Position numbers and translations under genes: made by a program. Below, piece by piece: positions 10,440 to 37,407 of a stretch of 64,000 nt of DNA; position 1 is the stretch's first letter, and each line of letters starts with the position of its first letter. Origin of the DNA: Phyllobates terribilis. Lineage: Eukaryota. The notes under the pieces are model-generated. The model made no database searches. It was given only the letters and a program-made list of their open reading frames with translations, and was not told the origin of the DNA. The stretch covers positions 1,213,650,001-1,213,714,000 of the forward strand of contig NW_027362761.1 in the NCBI RefSeq assembly GCF_046119375.1. Direction: 5' to 3'.

Positions 10440-11600
10440 TACTTGGATGGTTATCTCTTGTTTCTTGGCCAGATTCACAAATTAGGAATATTAACATGGG
10501 TCGGTCGTGGAGTGTTTAAAGCATGTGAGGCAGTGTGTTCGACGCCCGCGCTTCCCGACACCGTGCTGTAAATTTTTAAACAGGACTAAGAGAGTTGCAG
10601 CTTTTAGCTGAATGAGAGGCCCCACACATCAGGCGAAAAGAGTAAAGGATCACTGATGCCCTCACCAGTTCACCTCTGTGATTTATTTTTTCTGTGCTGC
10701 GTGCAACATTGTGCTAACAGTTTTTGCTCTATTAAATGATGAAAAACTAGATAAGAACATTTTAAAAAGAGCATTTTTTGATGAGAGTTATGGTCGTTCT
10801 TGGATAAGCCAGAGAGGTCCATGAAGGCTAGGTGAATTGTTATCGTTCGTCTTTTTGGGCAGATTCGCAAATTAGGAATATTAACATGGCTCGATCCTGG
10901 AGTGTTAAAAGCATGTGAGACTGGGTATACAACGTCCGCGCTTCCCGAATCCAAACTGTAAATTTTAAGCAGAATTAAAAGTCGCAACTACAGCTGAACG
11001 AGAGACCCAAATAAGGCAAAAGGAGCAGCATATCACTGACTCCGGCCCTGGTTCAACCCCTGTGACTCTTCTGTGCTGCGTCCAACCTTGACCTAACAGT
11101 TTTTGCTCTATTAAAGGGTGCAAAAAAAAATAGATGAGAACATTTTAAACAGAGCATTTTTGACGAGAGTTACGGTCGTTCTTGGATAAGCCAGAGAGGT
11201 CCACGAAGGCTAGGTGGATGGTTATCTCGTCTTTTTTCGCCAGATTCACAAATTAGGAATATTAACATGGCTCGGTCCAGGAGTGTTAAAAGCGTGTGAG
11301 ACTGGGCATACGACGTCCGTGCTTCCCAAATCTGAACTGTACATTTTTAAACAGAATTAAAAGTTGCAGCTATAGCTGAATGAGAGACCCAAGTAAGGCG
11401 AAAAGGAGCAACATATCACTGACGCCGGCTCTGGTTCAACCCCTGTGACTCTTCTGTGCTGTGTGCAACCTTGACCTAACAGTTTTTGCACTATTAAAGG
11501 GTGCAAAAAAATATATAGACAAGAGTAAATCTAAAAAAAAAAGAGCATTTCTGACAAGAATTACGTCCGTACCTGGATAAGCCACAGGGTTTCACACTGT
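10440..11600 (+). repeat. Diverged ~385-bp repeats upstream of the interferon-like ORF (unit 2)
   Basis: GGATAAGCC at 10802, 11184 and 11575; CAAATTAGGAATATT at 10478, 10868 and 11249. The last partial repeat is the putative promoter/5'UTR of the ORF. The same block is at ~14095-15265 and, one repeat shorter, at ~17740-18525. Confidence 0.85.
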
Positions 11601-11619
11601 GACAGCCTCTTTTAAAGAC

Positions 11620-12177
11620 ATGTCGTTGACAAATCACCTTTATATTTTCACATTTGTGGTGGTGGTGGCAGGTCCGATCTATGACGATGTCTGCAAATTA
11701 CCTGAGCAAGAGAACTTAAAGCAGCTGCATAATGCTTTTGTGAAGGCGAGCTCGGCCGCCAACTGTTCCACGAATGCTGAGTTAGACGAAGAACAATCCG
11801 AGAATGAAGAGATGAGGATGAAATTTTGTAATACGGTCTCAAAGATGAGCGATAACGAAGTTGGTGTTGTTATACATGAAATTCTGTTATGGATAGAGGA
11901 CAAACTAAAAAGTCTCTTGTGGTCCGATCGGCAAGAATATAGAAATGTGATGGAACTTTTGCAAATGCAGATAGATCTCACCACTTCTTGCCTACGAGCA
12001 ACTAAAGCAAGACTCGTGTAATACAAAACAGCAAAGTACTTGTCTCCACAAGGGGATTTCGTCAAAGACGGCGAGCAATCGCCTTGCAACTTTAAGGTCG
12101 CGAACAGCAAGATAACCAGAAACCTTCTGCTAGCCGAACAAATGATCGCTAATGCAGAGACAAAGCAAAAGTACTGA
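11620..12177 (+). pseudogene. Type I interferon-like pseudogene (unit 2)
   Basis: Full-length homolog with a premature TAA at 12019-12021 (CAA in intact copies; shared with unit 1). Confidence 0.75.
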
Positions 12178-15100
12178 AGAAGGCGAGCGGTGAAGCAGCG
12201 CGGGCGTCAAAAACAGGTCTCTGATTTTTGTTGTTCATCTTTATGTTTTTTTTTTAATTTTCTTTTCTGTTTTTTATTTTGTCAATGAAGCTTCAATAAA
12301 TTCTGGTGTCAAAGGCGATTACTGTGCGGTGAATGTTTTATTTTGTTTTCACTTTTCTTTTTCTTTCAAGAGTTTTTCAAACACAACAGAACTGGGATGT
12401 GCTCGGCGCATATATATAACATTCGTTCACATACGGTCCTCGTGGAGCCTACGGCTCGGCCACATTACTCCTTTATAGCGTAAAAGATCTTTTGCTGTTG
12501 CTAAAATCATGAACTATATTTTGCCCTTACATCTTGAGGTGGGTGGCAAGGAGAAAGAATGAACAAGCGTGTGCTCTCGTTACCAGAGGAAATCTCTGTC
12601 TCCTTCCCATTCAAAACTGTTTTTTACAATGTTTTTTTGATTTTCGGTCCCCCCCCACCACCCCCTCCGCCTGTTCGTGTTTACAGCCGTTTTACATTTT
12701 TCTCATCATCTCAAAGTCTTATTCATGTTAGTTGACATCACGTACAGAGACGGTCGGATTATGTCACTTGACTATATATGTATATATTAACAACCTGGGT
12801 TAAGCCTAAAACTGAAAAAATGAGACACAAAGGAAGGGTCTTTTTAAAAGTCTGATGATGTTCTTGACTCCTAGTGTTGAAAAGTCGAGAAGAAATCTTC
12901 CTCTTCTGTCTATATAGAACTGAAAAGTGCATTAGATTCTCTCATTTTTTTTTTTCTGAAAATGTAACCGTGTGTTCTCATGGAGCCGCGTCGTGCCATG
13001 GATGATGACCAGGCTCCTGTCAACCGGTGCCGAGCTCTGCTCTTACATGCAGAAATAACGGGGATCCTACAATTTCTCTCGTGCTGCTTCGCTCCTGTCT
13101 TGAGATCAGGAGTCCTGTTGAGCTCTTAAATACAGCAGTTTTTTTACATTACCACTTGTTATAACCTCCAGCCCATAGAGAAATGTGTTTCAGGCGTTTA
13201 GTCGGTCTGCTGACTGATCTGCTGAAGTTTTCCATTTCAATCGGTTCCTCAGATCACACACGTTTCTGTCACCAGCCGTGGCCGGCGAGTGACTCGGCTC
13301 AGCTAGTATCTCGTACAGAGATTGCTGCTCAGGAAGTCTCTCTCAGCATTCACTGGCTGTGAAGCTTGAAAGGAGGCAGGGAGGAGGCGCGGCAACTGTC
13401 TCTTTTTTTTTTTTTTTTTCAGCTTTTGATGGAAGGTATAGACTTTCTACTACTACTCCTACAGCCGAGGAGTCACCAGCCGCCCAGCACTGAGCGCTTA
13501 CTACACAATAGCTCGGTCTGGGCAGACACCTCGGCTGCTGGGCTTCCTAGATTTTGAAGCGACTGCCACAAGAGGGACCTTCTGAGCGACACGTTCCAAT
13601 CTACTATAGCTGACACTACAAAGCTTATTGTTTTATTTATTTTTAAATTCTTAGGCTGCCAGCTCATATTCTAAGTAGGTATATCATTGGGAAGGTTGAG
13701 TACGTCTCTTGAGATTTTTTTTTCTTTTATTCATTCATTTATTTTTATTTTTTTCTCTGCCAGTGATCAAGTTGGATGGCTTGATTTTTTTTTTTTTTTT
13801 TTTGTGTAGTGGTGATTTTATATGTTGATTTATATAGCGACCGGTGACAGTAGTTCTCAGGTGCCTTTTTGCTGTCGGTCACAATAACGATCTAGACGGT
13901 TTGTGGTCTTCCACACTCCCCGAGTAATCGTGTGCATGGCCATCTAGTGTAAGTTTAGTCACGGTCTTGATAGGAATCATTTGACTGTCGGGTCACCGTT
14001 ACGTTCAATATCTATGCCGCTCATGATCACCCAACTCCACGTAACAGTGTGTGCTATGGCACCATTAGAGAGACAGGCGTCAGCCGAAATAAGGTTACTT
14101 GGATGGTTATCTCTTGTTTCTTGGCCAGATTCACAAATTAGGAATATTAACATGGGTCGGTCGTGGAGTGTTTAAAGCATGTGAGGCAGTGTGTTCGACG
14201 CCCGCGCTTCCCGACACCGTGCTGTAAATTTTTAAACAGGACTAAGAGAGTTGCAGCTTTTAGCTGAATGAGAGGCCCCACACATCAGGTGAAAAGAGTA
14301 AAGGATCACTGATGCCCTCACCAGTCCACCCCTGTGATTTTTTTTTTTTCTGTGCTGCGTGCAACATTGTGCTAACAGTTTTTGCTCTATTAAATGATGA
14401 AAAACTACATGAGAACATTTTAAAAAGAGCATTTTTGACGAGAGTTATGGTCGTTCTTGGATAAGCCAGAGAGGTCCATGAAGGCTTGGTGAATTGTTAT
14501 CGCTCGTCTTTTTGGCCAGATTCACAAATTAGGAATATTAACATGGCTCGATCCTGGAGTGTTAAAAGCATGTGAGACTGGGTATATGAAATCCGCGCTT
14601 CCCGAATCCAAACTGTAAATTTTTAAGCAGAATTAAAAGTCGCAACTAAAGCTGAACGAGAGACCCAAATAAGGTAAAAGGAGCAGCATATCACTGACAC
14701 CGGCCCTGGTTCAACCCCTGTGACTCTTCTGTGCTGCGTGCAACCTTGACCTAACAGTTTTTGCACTATTAAAGGGTGCAAAAATAGATGAGAACATTTT
14801 AAAAAGAGCATTTTTGACGAGAGTTACGGTCGTTCTTGGATAAGCCAGAGAGGTCCACGAAGGCTAGGTGGATGGTTATCTCATCTTTTTTTTTTTACCA
14901 GATTCACAAATTAGGAATATTAACATGGCTCGGTCCAGGAGTGTTAAAAGCATGTGAGACTGGGCATACGACGTCCGTGCTTCCCAAATCTGAACTGTAC
15001 ATTTTAAACAGAATTAAAAGTTGCAGCTATAGCTGAATGAGAGACCAAAGTAAGGCAAAAAGGAGCAACATATCACTGACGCCGGCTCTGGTTCAACCCC

Positions 15101-15284
15101 CTGTGACTCTTCTGTGCTGTGTGCAACCTTGACCTAACAGTTTTTTGCACTATTAAAGGGTGTAAAAAAATATATATAGATAGGAATAAATCTAAAAAAA
15201 AAAAAAAGAGCATTTCTGAAGAGAATTACGTCCGTACCTGGATAAGCCACAGGGTTTCACACTGTGACAGCCTCTTTTAAAGAC

Positions 15285-15843
15285 ATTTCGCTGACAAATC
15301 ACCTTTACATTTTCACATTTGTGGTGGTGGTGGCAGGTCCCATCTATGACGGTGTCTGCAAATTACCTGAGCAAGAGAACTTAAAGCAGCTGCATAATGC
15401 TTTTTGTGAAGGCGAGCTTGGCCGCCAACTGTTCCACAAATGCTGTTTTAGACGAAGAACAATCCGAGAATGAAGAGATGAGGATGAAATTTTTTAATAC
15501 GGTCTCAAAGATGAGCGATGACGAAGTTGGTGTTGTTATACATGAATTTCTGTTATGGATAGAGGACAAACTAAAAAGTCTCATGTGGTCCGATCGGCAA
15601 GAATATAGAAATGTGATGGAACTTTTGCAAATGCAGATAGATCTCACGACTTCTTGCCTACGAGCAACTAAAACAAAACTCGTGCAACACAAAACAGCAA
15701 AGTACTTGTCTCCACAAGGGGATTTCGTCAAAGACGGCGAGCAATCGCCTTGCACCTTTAAGGTCGCGTGTAGCAAGATAACCAGAATCCTTCTGCTGGC
15801 CGAACAAATGATCGCTAATGCAGAGACAAAGCAAAAGTACTGA
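15285..15843 (+). pseudogene. Type I interferon-like pseudogene (unit 3)
   Basis: Start codon ATG>ATT at 15285 and a +1 T in GCTTTTTGTG. The native C-terminus is otherwise present. Confidence 0.75.
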
Positions 15844-18545
15844 AGAAGGCGAGCGGTGAAGCAGCGCGGGCGTCAAAAACAGGTCTCTGATTTTGTTGTT
15901 CATCTTTATGTTTTTAATTTTCTTTTTTCTGTATTTATTTTGTCAATGAAGCTTCAATAAATTCTGGTGTCCAAGGCGATTACTGTGCGGTGAATGTTTT
16001 ATTTTGTTTTTACTTTTCTTTCGAGAGTTTTCAAACATAACAGAACTAGGATGTGCGCGGCGCATATATATAACATTCGTTCACATACGGTCCTCGTGGA
16101 GCCTACGGCTCGGCCACATTACTCCTTTATAGCGTAAAAGATCTTTTGCTGTTGCTAAAATCATGAACTATATTTTTGCCCTTACATCTTGAGGTGGGTG
16201 GCAAGGAGAAAGAATGAACAAGCGTGTGCTCTCATTACCAGAGGAAATCTCTGTCTCCTTCCCATTCAAAACTGTTTTTTACAATGTTTTTTACGGTCAC
16301 CCCCCCCCCACCCGCCTGTTTGTGTTTACAGCCATTTTACATTTCTCATCATCTCAAAGTCTTTTTCGTGTTAGTTGACATCACGTACAGAGACGGTCGG
16401 TTTACGCCACTTGACTATATATGTATATATTAACAACTTGGACTAAGCCTAAAACTGCAAAAATGAGACACAAAGGAAGGGTCTTTTTAAAAGTCTGATG
16501 ATGTTCTTGACTCCTAGTGTTCAAAAGTCGAGAAGAAATCTTCCTCTTCTGTCTATATAGAACTGAAAAGTGCATTAGATTCTCTCTTTTTTTTTTTTTC
16601 TGAAAATGTAACCGTGTGTTCTCATGGAGCCGCGTCGTGCCATGGATGATGACCAGGCTCTTGTCAACCGGGGCCGAGCTCTGCTCTTACATGCAGAAAT
16701 AACGGGGATCCTGCAATTTCTCTCGTGCTGCTTCGCTCCTGTCTTGAGATCAGGAGTCCTGTTGAGCTCTTAAATACAGCAGTTTTTTACATTACCACTT
16801 GTTATAACCTCCAGCCCATAGAGAAATGTGTTTCAGGCGTTTAGTCGGTCTGCTGACTGATCTGCTGAAGTTTTCCATTTCAATCGGTTCCTCAGATCAC
16901 ACACGTTTCTGTCACCAGCCGTGGCCGGCGAGTGACTCGGCTCAGCTAGTATCTCGTACAGAGATTGCTGCTCAGGAAGTCTCTCTCAGCATTCACTGGC
17001 TGTGAAGCTTGAAAGGAGGCAGGGAGGAGGCGCGGCAACTGTCACTTTTTTTTTTTTTTTTTTTTCAGCTTTTGATGGAAGGTACAGACTTTCTACTACT
17101 ACTCCTACAGCCGAGGAGTCACCAGCCGCCCAGCACTGAGCGCTTACTACGCAATAGCTCGGTCTGGGCAGACACCTCGGCTGCTGGGCTTCCTAGATTT
17201 TGAAGCGACTGCCACAAGAGGGACCTTCTGAGCGAAACTTTCCAATCTACTATAGCTGACACTACAAAGCTTATTGTTTTATTTATTTTTAAATTCTTAG
17301 GCTGCCAGCTCATATTCTAAGTAGGTATATCATTGGGAAGGTTGAGTACGTCTCTTGAGATTTTTTTTTTCTTTTATTCATTCATTTATTTTTTTTTTTT
17401 CTCTGCCAGTGATCAAGTTGGATGGCTTGATTTTTTTTTTTTTTTTTGTGTAGTGGTGATTTTATATGTTGATTTATATAGCGACCGGTGACAGTAGTTC
17501 TCAGGTGCCTTTTTGCTGTCGGTCACAATAACGATCTAGCCGGTTTGTGGTCTTCCACACTCCCCGAGTAATCGTGTGCATGGCCATCTAGTGTAAGTTT
17601 AGTCACGGTCTTGATAGGAATCATTTGACTGTCGGGTCACCGTTACGTTCAATATCTATGCCGCTCATGATCACCCAACTCCACGTAACAGTGTGTGCTA
17701 TGGCGCCATTAGAGAGACAGGCGTCAGCCGAAATAAGGTTACTTGGATGGTTATCTCTTGTTTCTTGGCCAGATTCACAAATTAGGAATATTAACATGGG
17801 TCGGTCGTGGAGTGTTTAAAGCATGTGAGGCAGTGTGTTCGACGCCCGCGCTTCCCGACACCGTGCTGTAAATTTTTAAACAGGACTAAGAGAGTTGCAG
17901 CTTTTAGCTGAATGAGAGGCCCCACACATCAGGTGAAAAGAGTAAAGGATCACTGATGCCCTCACCAGTCCACCCCTGTGATTTTTTTTTTTTCTGTGCT
18001 GCGTGCAACATTGTGCTAACAGTTTTTGCTCTATTAAATGATGAAAAACTACATGAGAACATTTTAAAAAGAGCATTTTTGACGAGAGTTATGGTCGTTC
18101 TTGGATAAGCCAGAGAGGTCCATGAAGGCTTGGTGGATGGTTATCTCGTCTTTTTTTTACCAGATTCACAAATTAGGAATATTAACATGGCTCGGTCCAG
18201 GAGTGTTAAAAGCATGTGAGACTGGGCATACGACGTCCGTGCTTCCCAAATCTGAACTGTACATTTTAAACAGAATAAAAAGTTGCAGCTATAGCTGAAT
18301 GAGAGACCAAAGTAAGGCAAAAAGGAGCAACATATCACTGACGCCGGCTCTGGTTCAACCCCCTGTGACTCTTCTGTGCTGTGTGCAACCTTGACCTAAC
18401 AGTTTTTTGCACTATTAAAGGGTGTAAAAAAATATATATAGATAAGAATAAATCTAAAAAAAAAAAAAGAGCATTTCTGAAGAGAATTACGTCCGTACCT
18501 GGATAAGCCACAGGGTTTCACACTGTGACAGCCTCTTTTAAAGAC

Positions 18546-19065
18546 ATGTCGTTGGCAAATCACCTTTACATTTTCACATTTGTGGTGGTGGTGGCAGGTC
18601 CGATCTATGACGGTGTCTGCAAATTACCTGAGCAAGAGAACTTATACCAGCTGCATAATGCTTTTGTGAAGGCGAGCTCGGCCGCCAACTGTTTCGTAAA
18701 TGCTGTGTTAGCCGAAGAACAATCCGAGAATGAAGAGATGAGGATGACATTTTTTTAATACGGTCTCAAAGATGAGCGATGACGAAGTTGGTGTTGTTAT
18801 ACATGAATTTCTGTTATGGATAGAGGACAAACTAAAAAGTCTCTTGTGGTCCGATCGGCAAGAATATAGAAATATGATGGAACTTTTGCAAATGCAGATA
18901 GATCGCACGACTTCTTGCCTACGAGCAACTAAAACAAGACTCGTGCAATACAAAACAGCTAAGTACTTGTCTCCACAAGGGGATTTCGTCAAAGATGGCG
19001 AGCAATCGCCTTGCACCTTTAAGGTTCAACCCCCTGTGACTCTTCTGTGCTGTGTGCAACCTTGA
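18546..19065 (+). pseudogene. Truncated, frameshifted interferon-like copy
   Basis: T7 instead of T6 in the A(C/A)ATTTTTTAAT tract splits the ORF (track ORFs 18525-18758 and 18772-19065). Confidence 0.7.
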
Positions 19066-19209
19066 CCTAACAGTTTTTGCGCTATTAAAGGGTGCAAAAA
19101 AAATATATAGACCCGAGTAAATCTAAATAAAAGAGCATTTCTGATGAAAATTACGTCCGTACCTGGATAAGCCACAGGGTTTCACACTGTGACAGCCTCT
19201 TTTAAAGAC

Positions 19210-19728
19210 ATGTCGTTGGCAAATCACCTTTACATTTTCACATTTGTGGTGGTGGTGGCAGGTCCGATCTATGACGGTGTCTGCAAATTACCTGAGCAAG
19301 AGAACTTAAAGCAGCTGCATAATGCTTTTGTGAAGGCGAGCTCGGCTGCCAACTGTTTCGTAAATGCTGTGTTAGCCGAAGAACAATCCGAAAATGAAGA
19401 GATGAGGATGAAATTTTTTAATACGGTCTCAAAGATGAGCGATGACGAAGTTGGTGTTGTTATACATGAATTTCTGTTATGGATAGAGGACAAACTAAAA
19501 AGTCTCTTGTGGTCCGATCGGCAAGAATATAGAAATATGATGGAATTTTTGCAAATGCAGATAGATCGCGTGACTTCTTGCCTACGAGCAACTAAAACAA
19601 GACTCGTGCAATACAAAACAGCAAAGTATTTGTCTCCACAAGGGGATTTCGTCAAAGACGGCGAGCAATCGCCTTGCACCTTTAAGGTTCAACCCCCTGT
19701 GACTCTTCTCTGCTGTGTGCAACCTTGA
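19210..19728 (+). CDS. Interferon-like ORF, open but C-terminally truncated (172 aa, ends SPCTFKV-QPPVTLLCCVQP)
   Basis: The ATG is 21 nt downstream of the GTG used by the ORF track. The last helix is replaced by promoter-derived sequence. No poly(A) signal of its own seen. Confidence 0.45.
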   Translation: MSLANHLYIFTFVVVVAGPIYDGVCKLPEQENLKQLHNAFVKASSAANCFVNAVLAEEQSENEEMRMKFFNTVSKMSDDEVGVVIHEFLLWIEDKLKSLLWSDRQEYRNMMEFLQMQIDRVTSCLRATKTRLVQYKTAKYLSPQGDFVKDGEQSPCTFKVQPPVTLLCCVQP

Positions 19729-19872
19729 CCTAACAGTTTTTGCACTACTAAAGGGTGCAAAAAATATATATAGACAAGAGTAAATCTAAATAAAAGAGCA
19801 TTTCTGACGAGAATTACGTCCGTACCTGGATAAGCCACAGGGTTTCACACTGTGACAGCCTCTTTTAAAGAC

Positions 19873-20391
19873 ATGTCGTTGGGAAATCACCTTCACATTT
19901 TCACATTTGTGGTGATGGTGGCAGGTCCGATCTATGACGGTGTCTGCAAATTACCTGAGCAAGAGATCTTAAAGCAGCTGCATAATGCTTTTGTGAAGGC
20001 GAGCTCGGCCGCCAACTGTTTCGTAAATGCTGTGTTAGCCGAAGAACAATCCGAGAATGAAGAGATGAGGATGACATTTTTTAATACGGTCTCAAAGATG
20101 AGCGATGACGAAGTTGGTGTTGTTATACATGAATTTCTGTTATGGATAGAGGACAAACTAAAAAGTCTCTTGTGGTCCGATCGGCAAGAATATAGAAATG
20201 TGATGGAACTTTTGCAAATGCAGATAGATCGCACGACTTCTTGCCTACGAGCAACTAAAACAAGACTCGTGCAATACAAAACAGCAAAGTACTTGTCTGC
20301 ACAAGGGGATTTCGTCAAAGACGGCGAGCAATCGCCTTGCACATTTAAGGTTCAACCCCCTGTGACTCTTCTGTGCTGTGTGCAACCTTGA
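19873..20391 (+). CDS. Interferon-like ORF, open but C-terminally truncated (172 aa)
   Basis: Same structure as 19210-19728. Confidence 0.45.
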   Translation: MSLGNHLHIFTFVVMVAGPIYDGVCKLPEQEILKQLHNAFVKASSAANCFVNAVLAEEQSENEEMRMTFFNTVSKMSDDEVGVVIHEFLLWIEDKLKSLLWSDRQEYRNVMELLQMQIDRTTSCLRATKTRLVQYKTAKYLSAQGDFVKDGEQSPCTFKVQPPVTLLCCVQP

Positions 20392-20535
20392 CCTAACAGT
20401 TTTTCAACTATTAAAGAGTGCAGAAACTATATATAGACAAGAGTAAATCTAAATAAAAGAGCATTTCTGACGAAAATTACGTCCGTACCTGAATAAGCCA
20501 CAGGGTTTCACACTGTGACAGCCTCTTTTAAAGAC

Positions 20536-21078
20536 ATGTCGTTGGCAAATCACCTTTACATTTTCACATTTGTGGTGATGGTGGCAGGTCCGATCTATGA
20601 CGGTGTCTGCAAATTACCTGAGCAAGAGAACTTAAAGCAGCTGCATAATGCTGTTGTGAAGGCGAGCTCGGCCGCCAACTGTTTCGTAAATGCTGTGTTA
20701 GCCGAAGAACAATCCGAGAATGAAGAGATGAGGATGACATTTTTTAATACGGTCTCAAAGATGAGCGATGACGAAGTTGGTGTTGTTATACATGAATTTC
20801 TGTTATGGATAGAGGACAAACTAAAAAGTCTCTTGTGGTCCGATCGGCAAGAATATAGAAATATGATGGAATTTTTGCAAATGCAGATAGATCGCGCGAC
20901 TTCTTGCCTACGAGCAACTAAAACAAGACTCGTGCAATACAAAACAGCAAAGTACTTGTCTCCACAAGGGGATTTCGTCAAAGACGGCGAGCAATTGCCT
21001 TGCACCTTTAAGCTTCAACCCCCCTGTGACTCTTCTGTGCTGTGTGCAACCTTGACCAAACAGTTTTTGCACTATTAA
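20536..21078 (+). CDS. Interferon-like ORF, open, truncated with an alternative tail (180 aa, ends LQPPCDSSVLCATLTKQFLHY)
   Basis: An extra C in the junction C-tract shifts the tail frame. Confidence 0.4.
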   Translation: MSLANHLYIFTFVVMVAGPIYDGVCKLPEQENLKQLHNAVVKASSAANCFVNAVLAEEQSENEEMRMTFFNTVSKMSDDEVGVVIHEFLLWIEDKLKSLLWSDRQEYRNMMEFLQMQIDRATSCLRATKTRLVQYKTAKYLSPQGDFVKDGEQLPCTFKLQPPCDSSVLCATLTKQFLHY

Positions 21079-21198
21079 AGGGTGAAAAAATATATATAGA
21101 CAAGAGTAAATCTAAATAAAAGAGCATTTCTGACGAAAATTACGTCCGTACCTGGATAAGCCACAGGGTTTCACACTGTGACAGCCTCTTTTAAAGAC

Positions 21199-21717
21199 AT
21201 GTCGTTGGCAAATCACCTTTACATTTTCACATTTGTGGTGGTGGTGGCAGGTCCGATCTATGACGGTGTCTGCAAATTACCTGAGCAAGAGAACTTAAAG
21301 CAGCTGCATAATGCTTTTGTGAAGGCGAGCTCGGCCGCCAACTGCTTCGTAAATGCTGTGTTAGCCGAAGAACAATCCGAGAATGAAGAGATGAGGATGA
21401 AATTTTTTAATACGGTCTCAAAGATGAGCGATGATGAAGTTGGTGTTGTTATACATGAATTTCTGTTATGGATAGAGGACAAACTAAAAAGTCTCTTGTG
21501 GTCCGATCGGCAAGAATATAGAAATATGATGGAACTTTTGCAAATGCAGATAGATCGCACGACTTCTTGCCTACGAGCAACTAAAACAAGACTCGTGCAA
21601 TACAAAACAGCAAAGTACTTATCTCCACAAGGGGATTTCGTCAAAGACGGCGAGCAATCGACTTGCACCTTTAAGGTTCAACCCCTTGTGACTCTTCTGT
21701 GCTGTGTGCAACCTTGA
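21199..21717 (+). CDS. Interferon-like ORF, open but C-terminally truncated (172 aa)
   Basis: Same structure as 19210-19728. Confidence 0.45.
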   Translation: MSLANHLYIFTFVVVVAGPIYDGVCKLPEQENLKQLHNAFVKASSAANCFVNAVLAEEQSENEEMRMKFFNTVSKMSDDEVGVVIHEFLLWIEDKLKSLLWSDRQEYRNMMELLQMQIDRTTSCLRATKTRLVQYKTAKYLSPQGDFVKDGEQSTCTFKVQPLVTLLCCVQP

Positions 21718-21863
21718 CCTAACAGTTTTTGCGCTATTAAAGGATGCAAAAAAAATATATATAGACAAGAGTAAATCTAAATAAAAGAGCATTTCTGACG
21801 AGAATTACGTCCGTACCTGGATAAGCCACAGGGTTTCACACTGTGACAGCCTCTTTTAAAGAC

Positions 21864-22386
21864 ATGTCGTTGGCAAATCACCTTTACATTTTCACATTTG
21901 TGGTGGTGGTGCCAGGTCCGATCTATGCCGGTGTCTGCAAATTACCTGAGCAAGAGAACTTAAAGCAGCTGCATAATGCTTTTGTGAAGGCGAGCTCGGC
22001 CGCCAAATGTTTCGTAAATGCTGTGTTTGCCGAAGAACAATCCGAGAATGAAGAGATGAGGATGAAATTTTTTTTTTAATAAGGTCTCAAAGATGAGCGA
22101 TGACGAAGTTGGTGTTGTTATACATGAATTTCTGTGATGGATAGAGGACAAACTAAAAAGTCTCTTGTGGTCCGATCGGCAAGAATATAGAAATATGATG
22201 GAACTTTTGCAAATGCAGATAGATCGCGCGACTTCTTGCCTACGAGCAACTAAAACAAGACTCGTGCAATACAAAACAGCAAAGTACTTGTCTGCACAAG
22301 CGGATTTCGTCAAAGACGGCGAGCAATCGCCTTGCACCTTTAAGGTTCAACCCCCTGTGACTCTTCTGTGCTGTGTGCAACCTTGA
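21864..22386 (+). pseudogene. Truncated, frameshifted interferon-like copy
   Basis: T-tract expanded to T9 followed by TAA, plus a TGA in the helix-B region. Confidence 0.7.
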
Positions 22387-22530
22387 CCTAACAGTTTTTG
22401 CGTTATCAAAGGGTGCAAAAAAAAAATATAGACCAGAGTAAATCTAAATAAAAGAGCATTTCTGACGAGAATTACGTCCGTACCTGGATAAGCCACAGGG
22501 TTTCACACTGTGACAGCCTCTTTTAAAGAC

Positions 22531-23049
22531 ATGTCGTTGGCAAATCACCTTTACATTTTCACATTTGTGGTGGTGGTGGCAGGTCCGATCTATGACGGTG
22601 TCTGCAAATTACCTGAGCAAGAGATCTTAAAGCAGCTGCATAATGCTTTTGTGAAGGCGAGCTCGGCCGCCAACTATTTAGTAAATGCTGTGTTAGCCGA
22701 AGAACAATCCGAGAATGAAGAGATAAGGATGAAATTTTTTAATACGGTCTCAAAGATGAGCGATGACGAAGTTGGTGCTGTTATACATGAATTTCTGTTA
22801 TGGATAGAGGACAAACTAAAAAGTCTCTTGTGGTCCGATCGGCAAGAATATAGAAATATGATGGAACTTTTGCAAATGCAGATAGATTGCGCGACTTCTT
22901 GCCTACGAGCAACTAAAACAAGACTCGTGCAATACAAAACAGCAAAGTACTTGTCTCCACAAGGGGATTTCGTCAAAGACGGCGAGCAATCGCCTTACAC
23001 CTTTAAGGTTCAACCCCCTGTTACTCTTCTGTGCTGTGTGCAAACTTGA
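22531..23049 (+). CDS. Interferon-like ORF, open but C-terminally truncated (172 aa)
   Basis: Same structure as 19210-19728, but Cys49 is changed to Tyr (AANY). Confidence 0.4.
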   Translation: MSLANHLYIFTFVVVVAGPIYDGVCKLPEQEILKQLHNAFVKASSAANYLVNAVLAEEQSENEEIRMKFFNTVSKMSDDEVGAVIHEFLLWIEDKLKSLLWSDRQEYRNMMELLQMQIDCATSCLRATKTRLVQYKTAKYLSPQGDFVKDGEQSPYTFKVQPPVTLLCCVQT

Positions 23050-23088
23050 ACTAACAGTTTTTGCGTTATTAAAGGGTGCAAAAAAAAA

Positions 23089-23127
23089 TATATAGACAAG
23101 AGTAAATCTAAATAAAAGAGCATTTCT
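23089..23127 (+). promoter_or_regulatory. Putative TATA box (TATATAG) and Inr-like CATTTC of the interferon-like gene
   Basis: TATATAG at 23089-23095; CATTTC with A at 23122, 33 nt downstream of the TATA start; no upstream ATG before 23195. Repeated in the 663-bp units. Confidence 0.5.
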
Positions 23128-23194
23128 GACGAGATTTACGTCCGTGCCTGGATAAGCCACAGGGTTTCACACTGTGACAGCCTCTTTTAAAGAC

Positions 23195-23752
23195 ATGTCG
23201 TTGGCAAATCACCTTTACATTTTCACATTTGTGGTGGTGGTGGCAGGTCCCATCTATGACGGTGTCTGCAAATTACCTGAGCAAGAGAACTTAAAGCAGC
23301 TGCATAATGCTTTTGTGAAGGCGATCTCGGCCGCCAACTGTTTCGTAAATGCTGTGTTAGCCGAAGAACAATCCGAGAATGAAGAGATGAGGATGAAATT
23401 TTTTAATACGGTCTCAAAGATGAGCGATGACGAAGTTGGTGTTGTTATACATGAATTTCTGTTATGGATAGAGGACAAACTAAAAAGTCTCTTGTGGTCC
23501 GATCGGCAAGAATATAGAAATATGATGGAACTTTTGCAAATGCAGATAGATCGCACGACTTCTTGCTTACGAGCAACTAAAACAAGACTCATGCAATACA
23601 AAACAGCAAAGTACTTGTCTCCACAAGGGGATTTCGTCAAAGATGGCGAGCAATCGCCTTGCACCTTTAAAGTCGCGTACAGCAAGATAATCAGAATCCT
23701 TCTGCTGGCCGAACAAATGATCGCTAATGCAGAGACAAAGCAAAAGTACTGA
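23195..23752 (+). CDS. Intact intronless divergent type I interferon-like secreted protein (185 aa)
   Basis: Hydrophobic leader MSLANHLYIFTFVVVVAG. Cys at 25/49/124/156 (1/25/100/132 counting from the first Cys, versus 1/29/98/138 in IFN-alpha2). CKLP ~ CDLP; VVIHEFLLWI ~ PVLHEMIQQI; ungapped KYLSPQGDFVKDGEQSPCTFKVAYSKIIR ~ [29 protein letters not shown]. TATA upstream and AATAAA downstream. Comparison by eye to a remembered sequence. Confidence 0.72.
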   Translation: MSLANHLYIFTFVVVVAGPIYDGVCKLPEQENLKQLHNAFVKAISAANCFVNAVLAEEQSENEEMRMKFFNTVSKMSDDEVGVVIHEFLLWIEDKLKSLLWSDRQEYRNMMELLQMQIDRTTSCLRATKTRLMQYKTAKYLSPQGDFVKDGEQSPCTFKVAYSKIIRILLLAEQMIANAETKQKY

Positions 23753-23868
23753 AGAAGGCGAGCGGTGAAGCAGCGCGGGCGTCAAAAACAGGTCTCTGAT
23801 TTTGTTGCTCATCTTTATGTTTTTAATTTTCTTTTTTTTTACTGCTTTTATTTTGTCAATGAAGCTTC

Positions 23869-23874
23869 AATAAA
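23869..23874 (+). terminator. Polyadenylation signal AATAAA of the full-length gene
   Basis: 117 nt after the stop codon and followed by GU/U-rich sequence. Equivalent signals at 34396, 44131, 52153 and 58674. Confidence 0.6.
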
Positions 23875-24233
23875 TTCTGGTGTCAAAGGCGATTACTGTG
23901 CGGTGAATGTTTTATTTTGTTTTTTTACTTTTCTTTCGAGAGTTTTTCAAACACAACAGAACTGGGATGTGCGCGGCGCATATATATAACATTCGTTCAC
24001 ATACGGTCCTCGTGGAGCCTATGGCTCGGCCACATTACTTTTTTTTTTATAGCGTAAAAGATCTTTTGCTGTTGCTAAAATCATGAACTATATTTTGCCC
24101 TTACATCTTGAGGTGGGTGGCAAGGAGAAAGAATGAACAAGCGTGTGCTCTCATTACCAGAGGAAATCTCTGTCTCCTTCCCATTCAAAACTGTTTTACA
24201 ATGTTTTTTTCGGTCCCCCCCGCCTGTTCGTGT

Positions 24234-26090
24234 GAGTCTCAGTACATTCGCCTTTCTCCTCAGGGTTTAGCACACAGCTCCATCTACCCTGTCAGATGAT
24301 TGTCCTCTGTATCTCAGTACATTCGGCAGTTCTCAGTGTTCAGCACACAGATGTCTCTGCCCTGTCTGCTGCACAGTCATCTGATTTTCATGTGTGCCTC
24401 AGTTCATCCGCCTTTCTCCTCAATATTAAGCACACAGCTTGTTGTGTCCTGTCAGCTGAAAGTTCCTGTGTGTCTCACACATTGGCAGTTCTCCTCAATC
24501 TGTAGCACACACCTCCGATGATTGTCCTGTGTGTTTTAGTACTTCCGCGGTTCTCCTCAGTGTTTAGCACACAGCTCCTTCTGCCCTGTCAGATGGTTGT
24601 CCTGTGTGTCTTAGTACTTCCGCGGTTCTCCTCAGTGTTTAGCACACAGCTCCTTCTGCCCTGTCAGATGATTGTCCTGTGTGTCTCACACATCCGCGGT
24701 TCTCCTCAGTGTTTAGCACACAGCTCCTTCTGCCCTGTCAGATGATTGTCCTGTGTGTCTTAGTACATCCGCGGTTCTCCTCAGTGTTTAGCACACAGCT
24801 CCTTCTGCCCTGTCAGATGATTGTCCTGTGTGTCTCACACATCCGCGGTTCTCCTCAGTGTTTATCACACAGCTCCTTCTGCCCTGTCAGATGATTGTCC
24901 TGTGTGTCTTAGTACATCCGCGGTTCTCCTCATTGTTTAGCACACAGCTCCTTCTGCCCTGTCAGATTATTGTCCTGTGTGTCTTAGTACATCCGCGGTT
25001 CTCCTCAGTGTTTAGCACACAGCTCCTTCTGCCCTGTCAGATGATTGTCCTGTGTGTCTCACACATCCGCGGTTCTCCTCAGTGTTTAGCACACAGCTCC
25101 TTCTGCCCTGTCAGATGGTTGTCCTGTGTGTCTTAGTACATCCGCGGTTCTCCTCATTGTTTAGCACACAGCTCCTTCTGCCCTGTCAGATTATTGTCCT
25201 GTGTGTCTTAGTACATCCGCGGTTCTCCTCATTGTTTAGCACACAGCTCCTTCTGCCCTGTCAGATTATTGTCCTGTGTGTCTTAGTACATCCGCGGTTC
25301 TCCTCATTGTTTAGCACACAGCTCCTTCTGCCCTGTCAGATGATTGTCCTGTGTGTCTTAGTACATCCGCGGTTCTCCTCAGTGTTTAGCACACAGCTCC
25401 TTCTGCCCTGTCAGATGGTTGTCCTGTGTGTCTTAGTACATCCGCGGTTCTCCTCAGTGTTTAGCACACAGCTCCTTCTGCCCTGTCAGATGATTGTCCT
25501 GTGTGTCTTTGTACTTCCGCGGATCTCCTCAGTGTTTAGCACACAGCTCCTTCTTCCCTGTCTGCTGATACATACTGTGTGTCTCAGTAGATCTGCAGAT
25601 CTCCTAAGTGTTTACCACACGGCTCCTTTTGTTCTGTCTGCTGATATTTCCTGTTTCGCCACAGCCCAACTATCAGTATTTGGTTAGTATTTTTTCTCAC
25701 TAGTCGGAGACAAAACCAGGAGTGGAGCTCCTTCTGCCCTGTCAGCAGCTTGTACTCTCTTTCAGTGCTTAACACAGCTCATTTTCCCCTGTCAGATGAT
25801 TGTCCTGTGGGTCTCACACATCGTCATTCTCATCAGGGTTTAGCAAATGGCTCCTTCTGTTCTGTCAGATGATTGTTCTGTTTTCCTCAGTACATCGGCA
25901 GTTCTCTTCAGGGTTTACCACACAGCTCCTTCTGCCCTGTCAGATGATTGTCCTGTGTGTCTCACACATCGGCAGTGCTCCTCAGGGTTTACCACACAGC
26001 TCCTTCTGCCCTGTCAGCAGCTTGTACTCTCTTTCAGTACATTGGCAGTTTTCGTCAACGTTTCGCACAAAGTTTCTTCCGCCCAGTCAG
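24234..26090. repeat. 75/74-bp minisatellite, homogeneous core with diverged flanks
   Basis: Monomer CCTGTGTGTCTTAGTACATCCGCGGTTCTCCTCAGTGTTTAGCACACAGCTCCTTCTGCCCTGTCAGATGATTGT; the 74-bp variant has CTCACACATC. Confidence 0.95.
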
Positions 26091-26099
26091 CTAATAGAT

Positions 26100-26849
26100 C
26101 ACACTAGACCTCAAGCAGCTTGGATTGTAACCTCTCCACTCTTCCTCCAGACTCTGGGACCTTGTGGAGTGTGTCAATGACTGCCTTCTGGATATCTGTC
26201 AAGTCAGCAGTCTTCCCCATGATTGTGGAGGCTACTGAAAGGACTAAGGGACCTTTTTAAATGCTTCAGAAGTCTTTTGCTGGTGTTTTTTTTTAGTTTA
26301 TTATTCTAATCTACTGTGATAATGACTTTTGTGTTTTCATTGGCTGTAAGCCATAATGATCAACATTAACAGAAATAAACACTTGAAATAGATCCCTCTG
26401 CGTGTAATGACTCTATATAATAGATCCCTCTGTGTGTAATGACTCTATATAATAGATCCCTCTGTGTGTAATGACTCTATATAATAGATCCCTGTGTAAT
26501 GACTCTATATAATAGATCACTCTGTGTGTAATGACTCTATTTAATAGATCCCTCTGCGTGTAATGGCTCTATATAATAGATCCCTCTGTGTGTAATGACT
26601 CTATATAATAGATCCCTCTGTGTGTAATGACTCTATATAATAGATCCCTCTGTGTGTAATGACTCTATATAATAGATCCCTCTGTGTGTAATGACTCTAT
26701 TTAATAGATCCCTCTGTGTGTAATGACTCTATATAATAGATCCCTCTGTTTGTAATGACTCTATATAATATAGGAGTTTCACTTTTGGTATTGAAGAACT
26801 GAAATAAATTAACTTTTTGATGATATTCTAATTTTGTGAGAAGCACTTG
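26100..26849 (-). mobile_element. Internally deleted Tc1-like transposon remnant (one TIR plus transposase fragments)
   Basis: The minus strand starts CAAGTGCTTCTCACAAAATTAGAATATCATCAAAAAG after TA (26850-26851). ATG at 26220 gives MGKTADLTDIQKAVIDTLHK, fused to GPRVWRKSGE...PSCLRSSV, typical Tc1 transposase segments. Confidence 0.88.
26389..26768. repeat. 32-bp VNTR in the Tc1 TIR (12 units)
   Basis: TAGATCCCTCTGTGTGTAATGACTCTATATAA at 26389, 26421, 26453 and on to 26737. Three units at 37068-37164, 47083-47179 and 62849-62945. Confidence 0.95.
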
Positions 26850-27015
26850 TATGTATCTTTTGTTTGCAGATTGTAACTTTTGCTTTTGTCAGACTAATTC
26901 TTCTCGTCAGACATCTTTTGGTTCGTTCTTCGCTGTAAATATGTGTCACTAATGTCCTGAAGGCAGAGAATGACTTGTGTAGATGAGAAGTAAACGATAT
27001 GAGCCGGGCGCAGCA

Positions 27016-27100
27016 CCCAGCATGTACAGCGTAGTGGTAGTGCTCCTGCCCTACATGCCGGCGACACGGGTTCGAATCCTGAGCTGTACTTATTGCTGGG
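27016..27100 (+). ncRNA. tRNA-like / tRNA-derived Pol III element with an extended terminal stem
   Basis: B box GGTTCGAATCC at 27069-27079; A-box-like GTAGTGGTAG; GTACAGC pairs with GCTGTAC and is extended by CCCAGCA/TGCTGGG; anticodon-like arm CCTGC-CCTACAT-GCCGG (TAC). Not a canonical tRNA. Confidence 0.55.
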
Positions 27101-27299
27101 AGCTGAGAGAATGAACGACATCTACATATGTACAACAAATCATCGCTGTTAATACCTGACTTTAACTTATTATTAAGTTTGACGCCTTTGAGCTTCTGTG
27201 TTTCCAAGTTTGCCGGAAAAACTAAAAACGAGCAAGAAAAATGTCTGAACCAAAAGAAACTCAAGACAAACCTTGTTTGCTGTGCACCATCAAGTGTGA

Positions 27300-27650
27300 A
27301 TGTCTGCTCTGGAGAGTGAGATGTGGCTCTGCTGGAGAGTATATACGGGCCAATATGGAGCCCAGTCATCAGCAGAAGCCGTACAGTCCTGGGCTGTATG
27401 GACCGTATGTTCTGACTTCAATATCTATTGGAAACTGCGGTGAAAAGAACGATAAAGCTTCTGCCTTTCGTGGAAACATTGAGGATTTGAGTCCTGGCGT
27501 TGCTGCGTTAAGCACAGAGACCATACTGAGCCCATAGTGATAGCACAGAGCACACCGGTACTGGTAACGATCGCTCCGATCACTGGGGAGACACAACTTT
27601 CCATCAATATCATCTCTGACTTCTCTCAGATTGTAAAGCCAAAAAATTGA
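27300..27650 (+). pseudogene. Possible decayed Ig C1-set (MHC class I alpha3-like) remnant
   Basis: The frame starting at 27300 gives WLCW...(57 codons)...GFESWRCCVKHRDHTEPIVI, matching C-x-V-x-H-x4-E-P spacing. It has three in-frame stops. Motif match by eye only. Confidence 0.25.
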
Positions 27651-28409
27651 CATAAGGAAACAAAGACAAAGTCTGACATGACATTCGCCAAAATACTGTT
27701 CATTGTGGTATCTGTGACCGGTCTGGAGCCGGACGACAGCACAGGACTAAATGTTAAACAGGAATAAGAGGGCTGCAGCTTTTAGCTGAATGAGAGGTCA
27801 CACATCAGGCGAAAGGAGTAAAGGATCACTGATGCCGTCACCAGTTCATCCCTGTGATTTCTTTCTTCTGTGCTGCGTGCAACATTGTTCCAACAGTTTT
27901 TGCTCTGTTAAATGATGCAAAACTACATGAGAACATTTTAAAAAGAGCATTTTTTTACGAGAGTTACGGTCGTTCTTGGATAAGCCAGAGAGGTCCATGA
28001 AGGCTAGGTGGATGGTTATCTTGTCTTTTTGGCGAGATTCACAAATTAGGAATATTAACATGGCTCGGTCCAGGAGTGTTAAAAGCGTGTGAGACTGGGC
28101 ATACGACGTCCATATTTCCCAAGTCTGAACTGTACATTGTAAACTGAATTAAAAGTTGCAGCTATAGCTCAATGAGAGACCCAAGTAAGGCGAAAAGGAG
28201 CAACATATCACTGACGCCGGCTCTGGTTCAACCCCTGTGACTCTTCTGTGCTGTGTGCAACCTTGACCTAACAGTTTTTGCACTAATAAAGGGTGCAAAA
28301 AAATATATAGACAAGAGTAAATCTAAAAAAAGAGCATTTTCTGATAAGAATTACGTCCGTACCTGGATAAGCCACAGGGTTTCACACTGTGACAGCCTCT
28401 TTTAAAGAC

Positions 28410-33573: not shown

Positions 33574-33721
33574 CCTAACAGTTTTTGCGCTATTAAAGGG
33601 TGCAAAAAATATATATATATAGACAAGAGTAAATCTAAATAAAAGAGCATTTCTGACAAGAATTACGTCCGTACCTGGATAAGCCACAGGGTTTCACACT
33701 GTGACAGCCTCTTTTAAAGAC

Positions 33722-34279
33722 ATGTCGTTGGCAAATCACCTTTACATTTTCACATTTGTGGTGGTGGTGGCAGGTCCGATCTATGACGGTGTCTGCAAAT
33801 TACCTGAGCAAGAGAACTTAAAGCAGCTGCATAATGCTTTTGTGAAGGCGATCTCGGCCGCCAACTGTTTCGCAAATGCTGTGTTAGCCGAAGAACAATC
33901 CGAGAATGAAGAGATGAGGATGAAATTTTTTAATACGGTCTCAAAGATGAGCGATGACGAAGTTGGTGTTGTTATACATGAATTTCTGTTATGGATAGAG
34001 GACAAACTAAAAAGTCTCTTGTGGTCCGATCGGCAAGAATATAGAAATATGATGGAACTTTTGCAAATGCAGATAGATCGCACGACTTCTTGCTTACGAG
34101 CAACTAAAACAAGACTCGTGCAATACAAAACAGCAAAGTACTTGTCTCCACAAGGGGATTTCGTCAAAGACGGCGAGCAATCGCCTTGCACCTTTAAAGT
34201 CGCGTACAGCAAGATAATCAGAATCCTTCTGCTGGCCGAGCAAATGATCGCTAATGCAGAGACAAAGCAAAAGTACTGA
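33722..34279 (+). CDS. Intact type I interferon-like protein (185 aa)
   Basis: Differs from 23195-23752 by two residues (FANAV, RLVQ). AATAAA at 34396. Confidence 0.72.
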   Translation: MSLANHLYIFTFVVVVAGPIYDGVCKLPEQENLKQLHNAFVKAISAANCFANAVLAEEQSENEEMRMKFFNTVSKMSDDEVGVVIHEFLLWIEDKLKSLLWSDRQEYRNMMELLQMQIDRTTSCLRATKTRLVQYKTAKYLSPQGDFVKDGEQSPCTFKVAYSKIIRILLLAEQMIANAETKQKY

Positions 34280-37241: not shown

Positions 37242-37407
37242 TATGTATCTTTTGTTTGCAGATTGTAACTTTTGCTTTTGTCAGACTAATTCTTCTCGTC
37301 AGACATCTTTTGGTTCGTTCTTCGCTGTAAATATGTGTCACTAATGTCCTGAAGGCAGAGAATGACTTGTGTAGATGAGAAGTAAACGATATGAGCCGGG
37401 CGCAGCA

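What the first reader, a model, noticed from the sequence alone, without database searches (positions are those of the whole stretch)
23195..23752. A highly divergent, intronless type I interferon-like cytokine hidden in satellite-like DNA
Seen: a 185-aa single-exon ORF with a hydrophobic leader, 4 Cys (1/25/100/132 from the first Cys), a TATA upstream and an AATAAA downstream. Established knowledge, from the remembered IFN-alpha2 sequence: Cys at 1/29/98/138, CDLP at the N-terminus, V-L-H-E in helix B, and KY-x13-SPC-AWEV-x4-I-x-R at the C-terminus. The ORF matches the last segment without gaps (K,Y,K,S,P,C,V,I,R identical over 29 aa), including the Arg equivalent to IFNAR2-contacting R149. 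The normally conserved CAWE motif is CTFK and the R33 equivalent is absent. Inference: a new, atypical type I interferon lineage, possibly with altered receptor use or antagonist activity.
Basis: partly seen in the sequence, partly recalled or inferred. Interest (0 to 1): 0.92.

Follow-up and report, generated by a model that had tools for sequence, protein, structure and literature searches.

The report
Divergent frog interferon gene, massively repeated
The 185-residue reading frame is real and is a very divergent relative of type I interferons in a frog genome, but it is one of dozens of tandem copies, most truncated or broken, and no test here shows that it is expressed or active.

Summary
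The ORF at 23195-23752 (+) exists as described: 185 aa, hydrophobic leader, Cys at 25/49/124/156, TATATAG at -106, AATAAA 117 nt after the stop.

It is not a lone hidden gene. The window holds 36 copies:
- 5 intact full-length copies, 99-100% identical.
- 28 units of 664 bp, cut at codon 160. Only 6 have an open frame.
- 3 older full-length pseudogenes.

Each full-length copy is the last unit of an array of truncated units. The arrays repeat every 8-10 kb between 75-bp and 32-bp satellites.

Interferon kinship is supported, but only indirectly:
- The ORF itself gets no Pfam Interferon hit.
- Its only relative among 1.8 billion proteins is a 139-aa ORF from a tree-frog (Litoria) data set (E 1.9e-11, 40% identity).
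- That ORF passes Pfam's Interferon alpha/beta threshold.
- A joint profile hits only interferon-alpha chains in the PDB, weakly (E 0.12-0.6), with both C-terminal cysteines in register.

Structure prediction failed (pLDDT 46-51). Run contigs look like DNA or read-through, not mRNA. Divergence among copies is nearly equal at all three codon positions.

Intronless, four-cysteine, hard-to-detect interferons are already described in frogs. This is a new, extreme member; the satellite-like amplification is the unusual part. Function, receptor use and antagonism are untested.

The parts
23195..23752 (+). Full-length 185-aa single-exon ORF (the finding). Leader about residues 1-17/23. Cys codons at 23267, 23339, 23564 and 23660. 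SPC motif at residues 154-156. Helix-E-like tail at residues 161-185.
   Evidence: homology
23089..23095 (+). TATA-like TATATAG, 106 nt upstream of the ATG. It is present in every full-length copy and in the older copies.
23869..23874 (+). AATAAA, 117 nt after the stop. It is present only after full-length copies.
18362..23194 (+). Array of seven 664-bp units. Each holds 184 bp of 5' flank plus codons 1-160. Units start (ATG) at 18546, 19210, 19873, 20536, 21199, 21864 and 22531. Two are frameshifted. Five are open but lack the last helix and end in a short foreign tail.
23006..23016 (+). Duplication junction in the unit before the full-length copy. Codon 160 (TTTAAG-GT) is joined to position -184 of the 5' flank (..CTCTGGTTCAACC), with G/GT microhomology. 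This is a tandem-duplication breakpoint, not an intron.
33722..34279 (+). Second intact full-length copy (98.9% aa identity), the last unit of array 28226-34279.
43457..44014 (+). Third intact full-length copy (100% aa identity), the last unit of array 38617-44014.
51479..52036 (+). Fourth intact full-length copy (99.5%), the last unit of array 48636-52036.
58000..58557 (+). Fifth intact full-length copy (99.5%), the last unit of array 56488-58557.
7961..15843 (+). Three older full-length copies in a 3.66-kb repeat (starts 7961, 11620, 15285), about 90% identical to the young ones. All are dead: 3 stops, 1 stop, and lost ATG plus frameshifts.
23753..28225 (+). Inter-array segment of the higher-order repeat: 3' flank, 75-bp satellite (24517-26017), 32-bp satellite (26387-26770), then about 1.7 kb leading into the next array. 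It recurs after each full-length copy at 92-99% identity.

Best explanation
What it is. This is a very divergent, single-exon, four-cysteine member of the type I interferon family in a frog genome. It has been swept into a two-level tandem amplification.

Level 1. An unequal exchange joined codon 160 of the gene to position -184 of its own 5' flank, at a G/GT microhomology. That made a 664-bp unit: proximal promoter plus codons 1-160. The unit multiplied into arrays. Only the last unit of each array keeps the final helix, the stop codon and the AATAAA.

Level 2. The whole block repeats every 8-10 kb: array, full-length gene, 75-bp satellite, 32-bp satellite and spacer.

The protein, if made (inferred). 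It would be secreted and about 160-168 aa when mature. It would be a helical cytokine with disulfides C25-C124 and C49-C156, matching interferon-alpha C1-C98 and C29-C138. It would be expected to act through an interferon-alpha/beta-type receptor pair and JAK-STAT signalling.

My commitment. The sequence identity and the architecture are shown. Activity is not. I put about 40% on the full-length copies being expressed, working cytokine genes. I put about 60% on the block being a young, mostly decaying gene-derived repeat whose terminal ORFs are intact only because they are recent copies.
For: ORF and copy census.

Junction and origin of the spacer from the gene's own 5' flank.

Higher-order repeat.

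Unit tree: the five full-length copies plus unit 41463 form one clade, and unit types recur at matching positions in different arrays, so unit diversification predates block amplification.

Homology chain:
- Query to P0001, E 1.9e-11 in 1.84 billion proteins, 40% identity over residues 79-181.
- P0001 to Pfam PF00143 Interferon, 30.4 bits against a gathering score of 26.8, E 5e-7, profile positions 48-156 of 160.
- The joint profile's only PDB hits at E<=10 are eight interferon-alpha-2/alpha-1 sequences (E 0.12-0.6). W101, C124, KY and SPC156 are in register.
- The 53 residues before the match fit the 47 profile positions left over.

Fit with known frog interferons: they keep four cysteines, escape simple searches, and more than half lack ISRE/PRDI promoter elements (PMC4928184). 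P0001's source run is listed in the data statement of the Litoria verreauxii alpina genome paper.

Evidence for decay:
- 22 of 28 truncated units and all 3 older full-length copies are broken.
- Divergence by codon position is nearly flat: 0.026/0.020/0.030, against 0.040 in the spacer.
- dN/dS between young and old copies is 0.6-0.8.
- No GAAANNGAAA, NF-kB-like or ATTTA motif lies near the gene.
- Contigs from all four runs laid, the three 'RNA?'/unclassified ones included, cross the stop and the AATAAA. In X1 and X2 a contig also starts inside the preceding unit.
Against: Against interferon identity:
- The query alone gets no Interferon hit in Pfam, even at E<=10, and none in the PDB.
- The N-terminal 78 residues have no independent homology support.
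- Language-model neighbours of the query are class I long-chain cytokines (IL-11, leptin, LIF, CNTF, growth hormone) at 0.85-0.89, not interferons.
- No confident structure could be obtained.

Against 'decaying repeat':
- All 5 young full-length copies are intact, against 6 of 28 truncated units.
- Some full-length against truncated pairs give dN/dS of 0.06-0.2. The counts are tiny (3-8 changes) and the copies are not independent.
- The TATA box, start context and poly(A) signal are kept in every full-length copy.
Confidence: 0.7

Rival explanations
1. The full-length ORF is a working, expressed cytokine gene of a new, atypical type I interferon lineage, perhaps with altered receptor use or antagonist activity.
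For: Five of five young full-length copies are intact, with leader, four cysteines, R149 equivalent, TATA box and AATAAA. The family was conserved at protein level between two frogs, at 40% identity with the structural residues kept. Many Xenopus interferon genes also lack ISRE/PRDI elements.
Against: No mRNA-like signal in any of the four runs laid. Divergence is nearly flat across codon positions. The older copies are dead. Word depth of 260-1180 in a 2.27-billion-letter DNA run points to very many copies (rough), which is unheard of for active interferon genes. The five intact copies are near-identical recent duplicates, so their intactness has little weight. Nothing here tests receptor use or antagonism.
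Confidence: 0.3
2. It is not an interferon but a class I long-chain helical cytokine (IL-6/IL-11/LIF/CNTF/leptin-like), and the interferon link is a false transitive inference.
For: The ESM Atlas feature search places both the whole protein and residues 76-185 next to class I long-chain cytokine clusters: IL-12A, G-CSF-like, IL-11, leptin, LIF, CNTF and growth hormone for the whole protein, and cardiotrophin-2-like, leptin, IL-6, IL-11, LIF, CNTF and IL-27A for residues 76-185. Scores are 0.85-0.89. There is no direct Pfam Interferon hit.
Against: Those scores are below 0.9, which the tool calls leads only. P0001 passes Pfam's curated Interferon threshold, and its Atlas neighbours are interferon clusters. 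The joint profile hits only interferon-alpha in the PDB. The cysteine spacing fits interferon-alpha. Class I cytokine genes of this group carry introns (background knowledge), while this ORF is a single exon.
Confidence: 0.07
3. It is a chance open reading frame in satellite DNA with no protein-coding history.
For: It lies in tandem repeats. An antisense ORF of 143 aa is open too. It is absent from protein collections.
Against: A cross-species protein match at E 1.9e-11 to an ORF that passes the Pfam Interferon gathering score. Conserved Cys, Trp and SPC positions.
Confidence: 0.02

Closest known systems
Amphibian intronless type I interferons (Xenopus tropicalis/laevis IFNX genes; Nanorana parkeri), Sang et al. 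2016 (PMC4928184), Tian et al. 2019 (PMC7016992)
   Same: Frog host. Single-exon coding sequence. Four conserved cysteines. Similarity to classical interferons is too low for simple searches. Clustered, lineage-specific expansion with pseudogenes. Many promoters lack ISRE/PRDI elements.
   Different: Reported repertoires are several to about 40 genes per species, spread over about 0.5 Mb. Here the gene is part of a satellite-like higher-order repeat with 36 copies in 64 kb, most cut at codon 160. No sequence comparison or phylogeny with IFNX proteins could be made here, because none was retrievable as a tool sequence.
P0001, a 139-aa ORF on a 2.3-kb Logan contig of run SRR32377441, which is listed in the data statement of the Litoria verreauxii alpina genome paper
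   Same: 40% identity over residues 79-181. Shared W, both C-terminal cysteines, YLSP, SPC and the RILL helix. It passes the Pfam Interferon gathering score.
   Different: Only the C-terminal two thirds is present. It is preceded by an acceptor-like ttcctcag, and no N-terminal homology lies within 554 bp upstream. So it either has an intron there or is a 5'-truncated relic. It has a longer C-terminal tail and is not seen in tandem on its contig.
Human interferon-alpha-2 (PDB 1ITF, 1RH2, 3SE3)
   Same: About a quarter of residues are identical over residues 83-174 in HMMER's alignment (my count). C98 and C138 equivalents, W76, K133-Y, the S-P-C motif and R149 are kept. Total length and cysteine spacing are similar (1/25/100/132 against 1/29/98/138).
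   Different: CAWE is CTFK. The R144 equivalent is Tyr. No R33 equivalent follows the second Cys. The profile E-value is only 0.12.
Fish four-cysteine (group II) type I interferons
   Same: Four-cysteine pattern. Secreted helical cytokine of similar size.
   Different: The fish genes have 4-5 exons (PMC4928184); this ORF is a single exon. Not compared by sequence here.

Membership tests
Type I interferon (Pfam PF00143, Interferon alpha/beta domain) | The protein itself matches the family profile above the curated threshold | tested here: not met
   No PF00143 hit for the whole protein, the mature part or the C-terminal part, even at E<=10.
Type I interferon (Pfam PF00143, Interferon alpha/beta domain) | Significant homology to a protein that does match the profile (transitive membership) | tested here: met
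   Query to P0001: E 1.9e-11 library-wide, 4e-22 pairwise. P0001 to PF00143: 30.4 bits against a gathering score of 26.8. The joint profile hits only interferon-alpha chains in the PDB, E 0.12-0.6.
Type I interferon (Pfam PF00143, Interferon alpha/beta domain) | Two conserved disulfides (interferon-alpha C1-C98 and C29-C138, the four-cysteine pattern) | tested here: met
   HMMER aligns C124 and C156 to C98 and C138. C25 and C49 fit by spacing only (inference). Actual pairing is not testable here.
Type I interferon (Pfam PF00143, Interferon alpha/beta domain) | Five-helix class II cytokine fold | tested here: inconclusive
   Both AlphaFold2 models are all-helical, with 5-6 helices at plausible positions. 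Mean pLDDT is 46 and 51, pTM 0.31 and 0.46. Foldseek against the PDB and Swiss-Prot models gave nothing below E 0.1.
Type I interferon (Pfam PF00143, Interferon alpha/beta domain) | Cleavable secretory signal peptide | not testable with these tools
   A hydrophobic stretch at residues 7-18 is visible. No signal-peptide predictor was available. Cleavage after A17 or G23 is my inference.
Type I interferon (Pfam PF00143, Interferon alpha/beta domain) | Virus- or IRF-responsive promoter elements (PRDI/ISRE-like GAAANNGAAA, NF-kB site) | tested here: not met
   None within 200 bp upstream of any full-length copy. This is not strictly defining: more than half of Xenopus interferon promoters lack them.
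Type I interferon (Pfam PF00143, Interferon alpha/beta domain) | Signals through the interferon-alpha/beta receptor and induces antiviral genes | not testable with these tools
   Needs recombinant protein and cells of this frog.
Amphibian intronless interferons (IFNX group) | Whole coding sequence in one exon | tested here: met
   The ORF is continuous from ATG to stop and covers the entire interferon domain.
Amphibian intronless interferons (IFNX group) | Groups with Xenopus or Nanorana IFNX in a phylogeny | not tested
   No IFNX sequence could be obtained as a tool sequence. All three word-indexed searches found nothing beyond P0001.
Expressed gene | Transcript with a defined start and a poly(A) end | tested here: inconclusive
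   Only assembled contigs were available. Contigs in all four runs cross the AATAAA site, and in X1 and X2 a contig starts inside the preceding unit, as DNA or read-through would.

The most novel reading that the evidence does not exclude
The array is not junk. A frog keeps hundreds of near-identical, promoter-bearing interferon genes as a dosage array, as with histone or rDNA arrays, for burst production of an atypical interferon. Alternatively, the open truncated units make helix-E-less proteins that act as receptor decoys or antagonists.
Probability: 0.08. Interest if true: 0.85.

Novelty: new member of a known kind. Interest (0 to 1): 0.45.

Why it matters
Frogs are the one vertebrate group where intron-containing and intronless interferons coexist, and where the origin of amniote-type interferon genes can be studied. 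This locus matters in three ways:
- It adds a member so divergent that Pfam misses it.
- It shows that such genes can be found through one bridging relative.
- It shows an interferon gene turning into a satellite-like repeat through a mapped partial-duplication junction.

If the copies are active, this would be by far the largest interferon gene amplification known. If they are silent, it is a clean example of a gene-derived satellite, and a warning that intact ORFs in young repeats are weak evidence of function.

Tried and rejected
- Direct Pfam scans of the whole, mature and C-terminal protein and of old-copy pieces: no Interferon hit.
- phmmer against the PDB with the query and with P0001: only spurious hits.
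- Three word-indexed searches of 5.8 billion proteins (query, P0001, alignment A2): nothing beyond P0001.
- Exact look-ups of the proteins: not on record.
- Two AlphaFold2 runs with shallow alignments: pLDDT 46 and 51. Foldseek on the better one gave only generic helical proteins, so the structure route was dropped.
- Scan of viral contigs for relatives, to test a viral origin: none.
- Rfam on the window: nothing.
- 'The break at codon 160 is a splice donor': rejected. The sequence after it is the gene's own 5' flank from -184, also found upstream of the first unit of arrays and of the old copies.
- '5 of 5 intact against 6 of 28' as a selection test: rejected as evidence. The naive hypergeometric probability is about 0.002 (my arithmetic), but the copies are recent duplicates of one another.
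- Ancestral-state mapping of substitutions: the machine does not offer ancestral sequences, so it was not done by any other route.
- The Rana temporaria large-tandem-repeat paper: a term search found no mention of '664' or '663'.

Full report
**Observation**

The ORF runs from ATG 23195 to TGA 23750-23752 and encodes 185 residues.
- It starts with a hydrophobic stretch.
- It has four cysteines, at residues 25, 49, 124 and 156.
- TATATAG lies 106 nt upstream and AATAAA 117 nt after the stop. The start context is gacATGT.

A tblastn of the protein against the window finds 36 copies.
- Five are full-length, intact and 99-100% identical: starts 23195, 33722, 43457, 51479 and 58000.
- Each is the last unit of an array of 664-bp units. 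A unit holds 184 bp of upstream sequence and codons 1-160, then ends in a short foreign tail.
- Of 28 such truncated units, 22 carry frameshifts or stops.
- Three older full-length copies (7961, 11620, 15285), about 90% identical, sit in a 3.66-kb repeat. All three are dead.

**The truncation point**

An alignment shows that the sequence after codon 160 is the gene's own 5' flank from position -184. It is joined at a G/GT microhomology. The same flank lies upstream of the first unit of arrays and of the old copies. So the break is a tandem-duplication junction, not a splice site.

**Higher-order repeat and history**

Each block is an array, the full-length gene, a 75-bp satellite, a 32-bp satellite and about 1.7 kb of spacer. 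The block recurs at 92-99% identity every 8-10 kb and runs off the right end of the window.

A tree of units groups the five full-length copies with unit 41463. It groups the broken unit types by their position in the block. So units diversified first and the block was amplified later.

**Identity of the protein**

Direct tests:
- Pfam finds no interferon domain in the ORF, whole or in parts, even at E<=10.
- phmmer against the PDB finds nothing real.
- A word-indexed search of 5.8 billion proteins finds nothing.

The bridging relative:
- An exhaustive phmmer over 1.84 billion representatives finds one true relative, P0001, of 139 aa. E is 1.9e-11, with 40% identity over residues 79-181.
- P0001 passes the curated gathering score of Pfam PF00143 (Interferon alpha/beta): 30.4 against 26.8 bits, E 5e-7, profile positions 48-156 of 160.
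- Its language-model neighbours are interferon clusters.

The joint profile:
- A profile of the ORF family plus P0001 hits eight PDB sequences at E<=10. All are interferon-alpha-2 or alpha-1 (E 0.12-0.6).
- In those alignments W101, C124, K139-Y140, S154-P155-C156 and R167 line up with W76, C98, K133-Y, S-P-C138 and R149.
- The 53 mature residues before the matched part fit the 47 profile positions left over. The first two cysteines are spaced as in interferon-alpha.

I therefore accept membership in the type I interferon family at about 0.8-0.85. The N-terminal third has no independent support.

Against this:
- Language-model feature search of the query points to class I long-chain cytokines at 0.85-0.89. 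The tool itself rates that as a lead only.
- Structure prediction with the shallow alignments available gave pLDDT 46 and 51. Foldseek on the second, better model returned nothing usable.

**Organism and literature**

Earlier notes of this scan call the genome a frog and place the window about 394 Mb into a chromosome. I did not verify this independently.

P0001's contig comes from run SRR32377441, which the Litoria verreauxii alpina genome paper lists among its data. The contig shares no nucleotide similarity with the window.

Frog intronless type I interferons are established knowledge:
- Xenopus carries roughly 22-36 intronless type I genes per species plus pseudogenes. Nanorana has fewer.
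- Almost all keep four cysteines.
- They are so divergent that simple BLAST has limited power.
- More than half of their promoters lack ISRE/PRDI elements (PMC4928184, PMC7016992).

The ORF fits that description. Its lack of GAAANNGAAA, NF-kB-like and ATTTA motifs is therefore weak evidence either way.

**Is it active?**

The single read-laying run used Logan contigs of four runs.
- In the 'RNA?'/unclassified runs (X1, X3, X2), contigs run through the stop and the AATAAA and on to the satellite. In X1 and X2 a contig also begins inside the preceding truncated unit.
- Depth downstream is equal or higher than over the gene.
- This looks like DNA or read-through, not an mRNA.
- In a 2.27-billion-letter DNA run, word depth is about 850-1180 on the shared core and about 260-300 on the full-length-specific part.
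- If the genome is several Gb, that means hundreds of copies or more. This is a rough inference, with no single-copy calibration.

Among the young units:
- Divergence is nearly flat across codon positions (0.026, 0.020, 0.030), against 0.040 in the spacer.
- dN/dS between young and old copies is 0.6-0.8.
- A few pairs give 0.06-0.2, but on 3-8 changes.
- The five intact full-length copies are recent duplicates of one another, so their intactness carries little weight.

I put about 40% on working genes and about 60% on a young, decaying, gene-derived repeat.

**Verdict**

- Supported: an interferon-family, intronless sequence.
- Not supported or untested: a unique hidden gene, a demonstrably new lineage, and altered receptor use or antagonism.

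The protein is a new, extreme member of a known kind. The satellite-like two-level amplification, with its mapped junction, is the unusual feature.

No ancestral reconstruction was made, because the machine does not offer it.

Noticed in passing
window 1722-6702: A nested palindrome of about 5 kb. Several inverted-repeat pairs have arms of 200-609 nt at 91-99% complementarity, and short hairpin-like repeats of 121-154 bp lie inside. It sits just left of the oldest interferon-like copies.
   Followed up: partly
window 24517-26017, 35043-36094, 44779-46131, 52801-53852, 59036-61875: A 75-bp satellite (14-38 copies per array, 79-85% matches) with strong negative GC and AT skew. Long ORFs through it, such as 59262-60677 (471 aa), are repeat artefacts. 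Its depth in all sequencing runs is several times that of the gene.
   Followed up: partly
window 26387-26770, 37066-37166, 47081-47181, 54802-55030, 62847-62947: A 32-bp satellite (3-12 copies, 94-98% matches) that follows each 75-bp array.
   Followed up: no
window 7032-7865, 10444-11524, 14103-15169: The promoter and 5' flank of the older copies is itself tandemly duplicated (period about 380 bp, 2.2-2.8 copies). This is an earlier round of the same kind of 5'-end amplification.
   Followed up: partly
window 23339-23371 versus 8105-8137, 11764-11796 and 31208-31240: Four amino-acid changes cluster right after the second cysteine: CFVNAVLAEEQ in young copies against CSTNAELDEEQ in the old copies and in unit 31064. 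In interferon-alpha this is the receptor-binding AB loop. It could be a gene-conversion tract or past diversifying change.
   Followed up: no
window 23254-23685 (-) and the same place in every unit: An antisense ORF of 136-143 aa is open opposite the interferon-like frame in most units. It has no Pfam match and is probably a by-product of the sense frame's composition.
   Followed up: partly
window 26809-27369 (-), 37201-37761 (-), 47220-47780 (-), 55069-55629 (-), 62986-63546 (-); 36457-36885 (+), 46494-46943 (+), 54215-64664 region (+): Recurrent ORFs of 186 aa (minus strand) and 142-149 aa (plus strand) lie in the inter-array spacer of each block. The four ORFs scanned had no Pfam match. 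The sequences look low in complexity.
   Followed up: partly
L001 540-565 and 34-153 / 1214-1333: In the Litoria contig the interferon-like ORF is preceded by an acceptor-like ttcctcag, and no N-terminal homology lies within 554 bp upstream. So it has either one long last exon after an intron or is a 5'-truncated relic. A 120-nt direct repeat (71% identity) flanks it.
   Followed up: partly
P0002 (not in the window): The second phmmer hit (E 1.2e-4) is a 2053-aa NACHT/HEAT-repeat-like protein. It matches residues 45-95 through six repeated stretches rich in A, L, N, E and K. I judge it a compositional match, not a relative.
   Followed up: no
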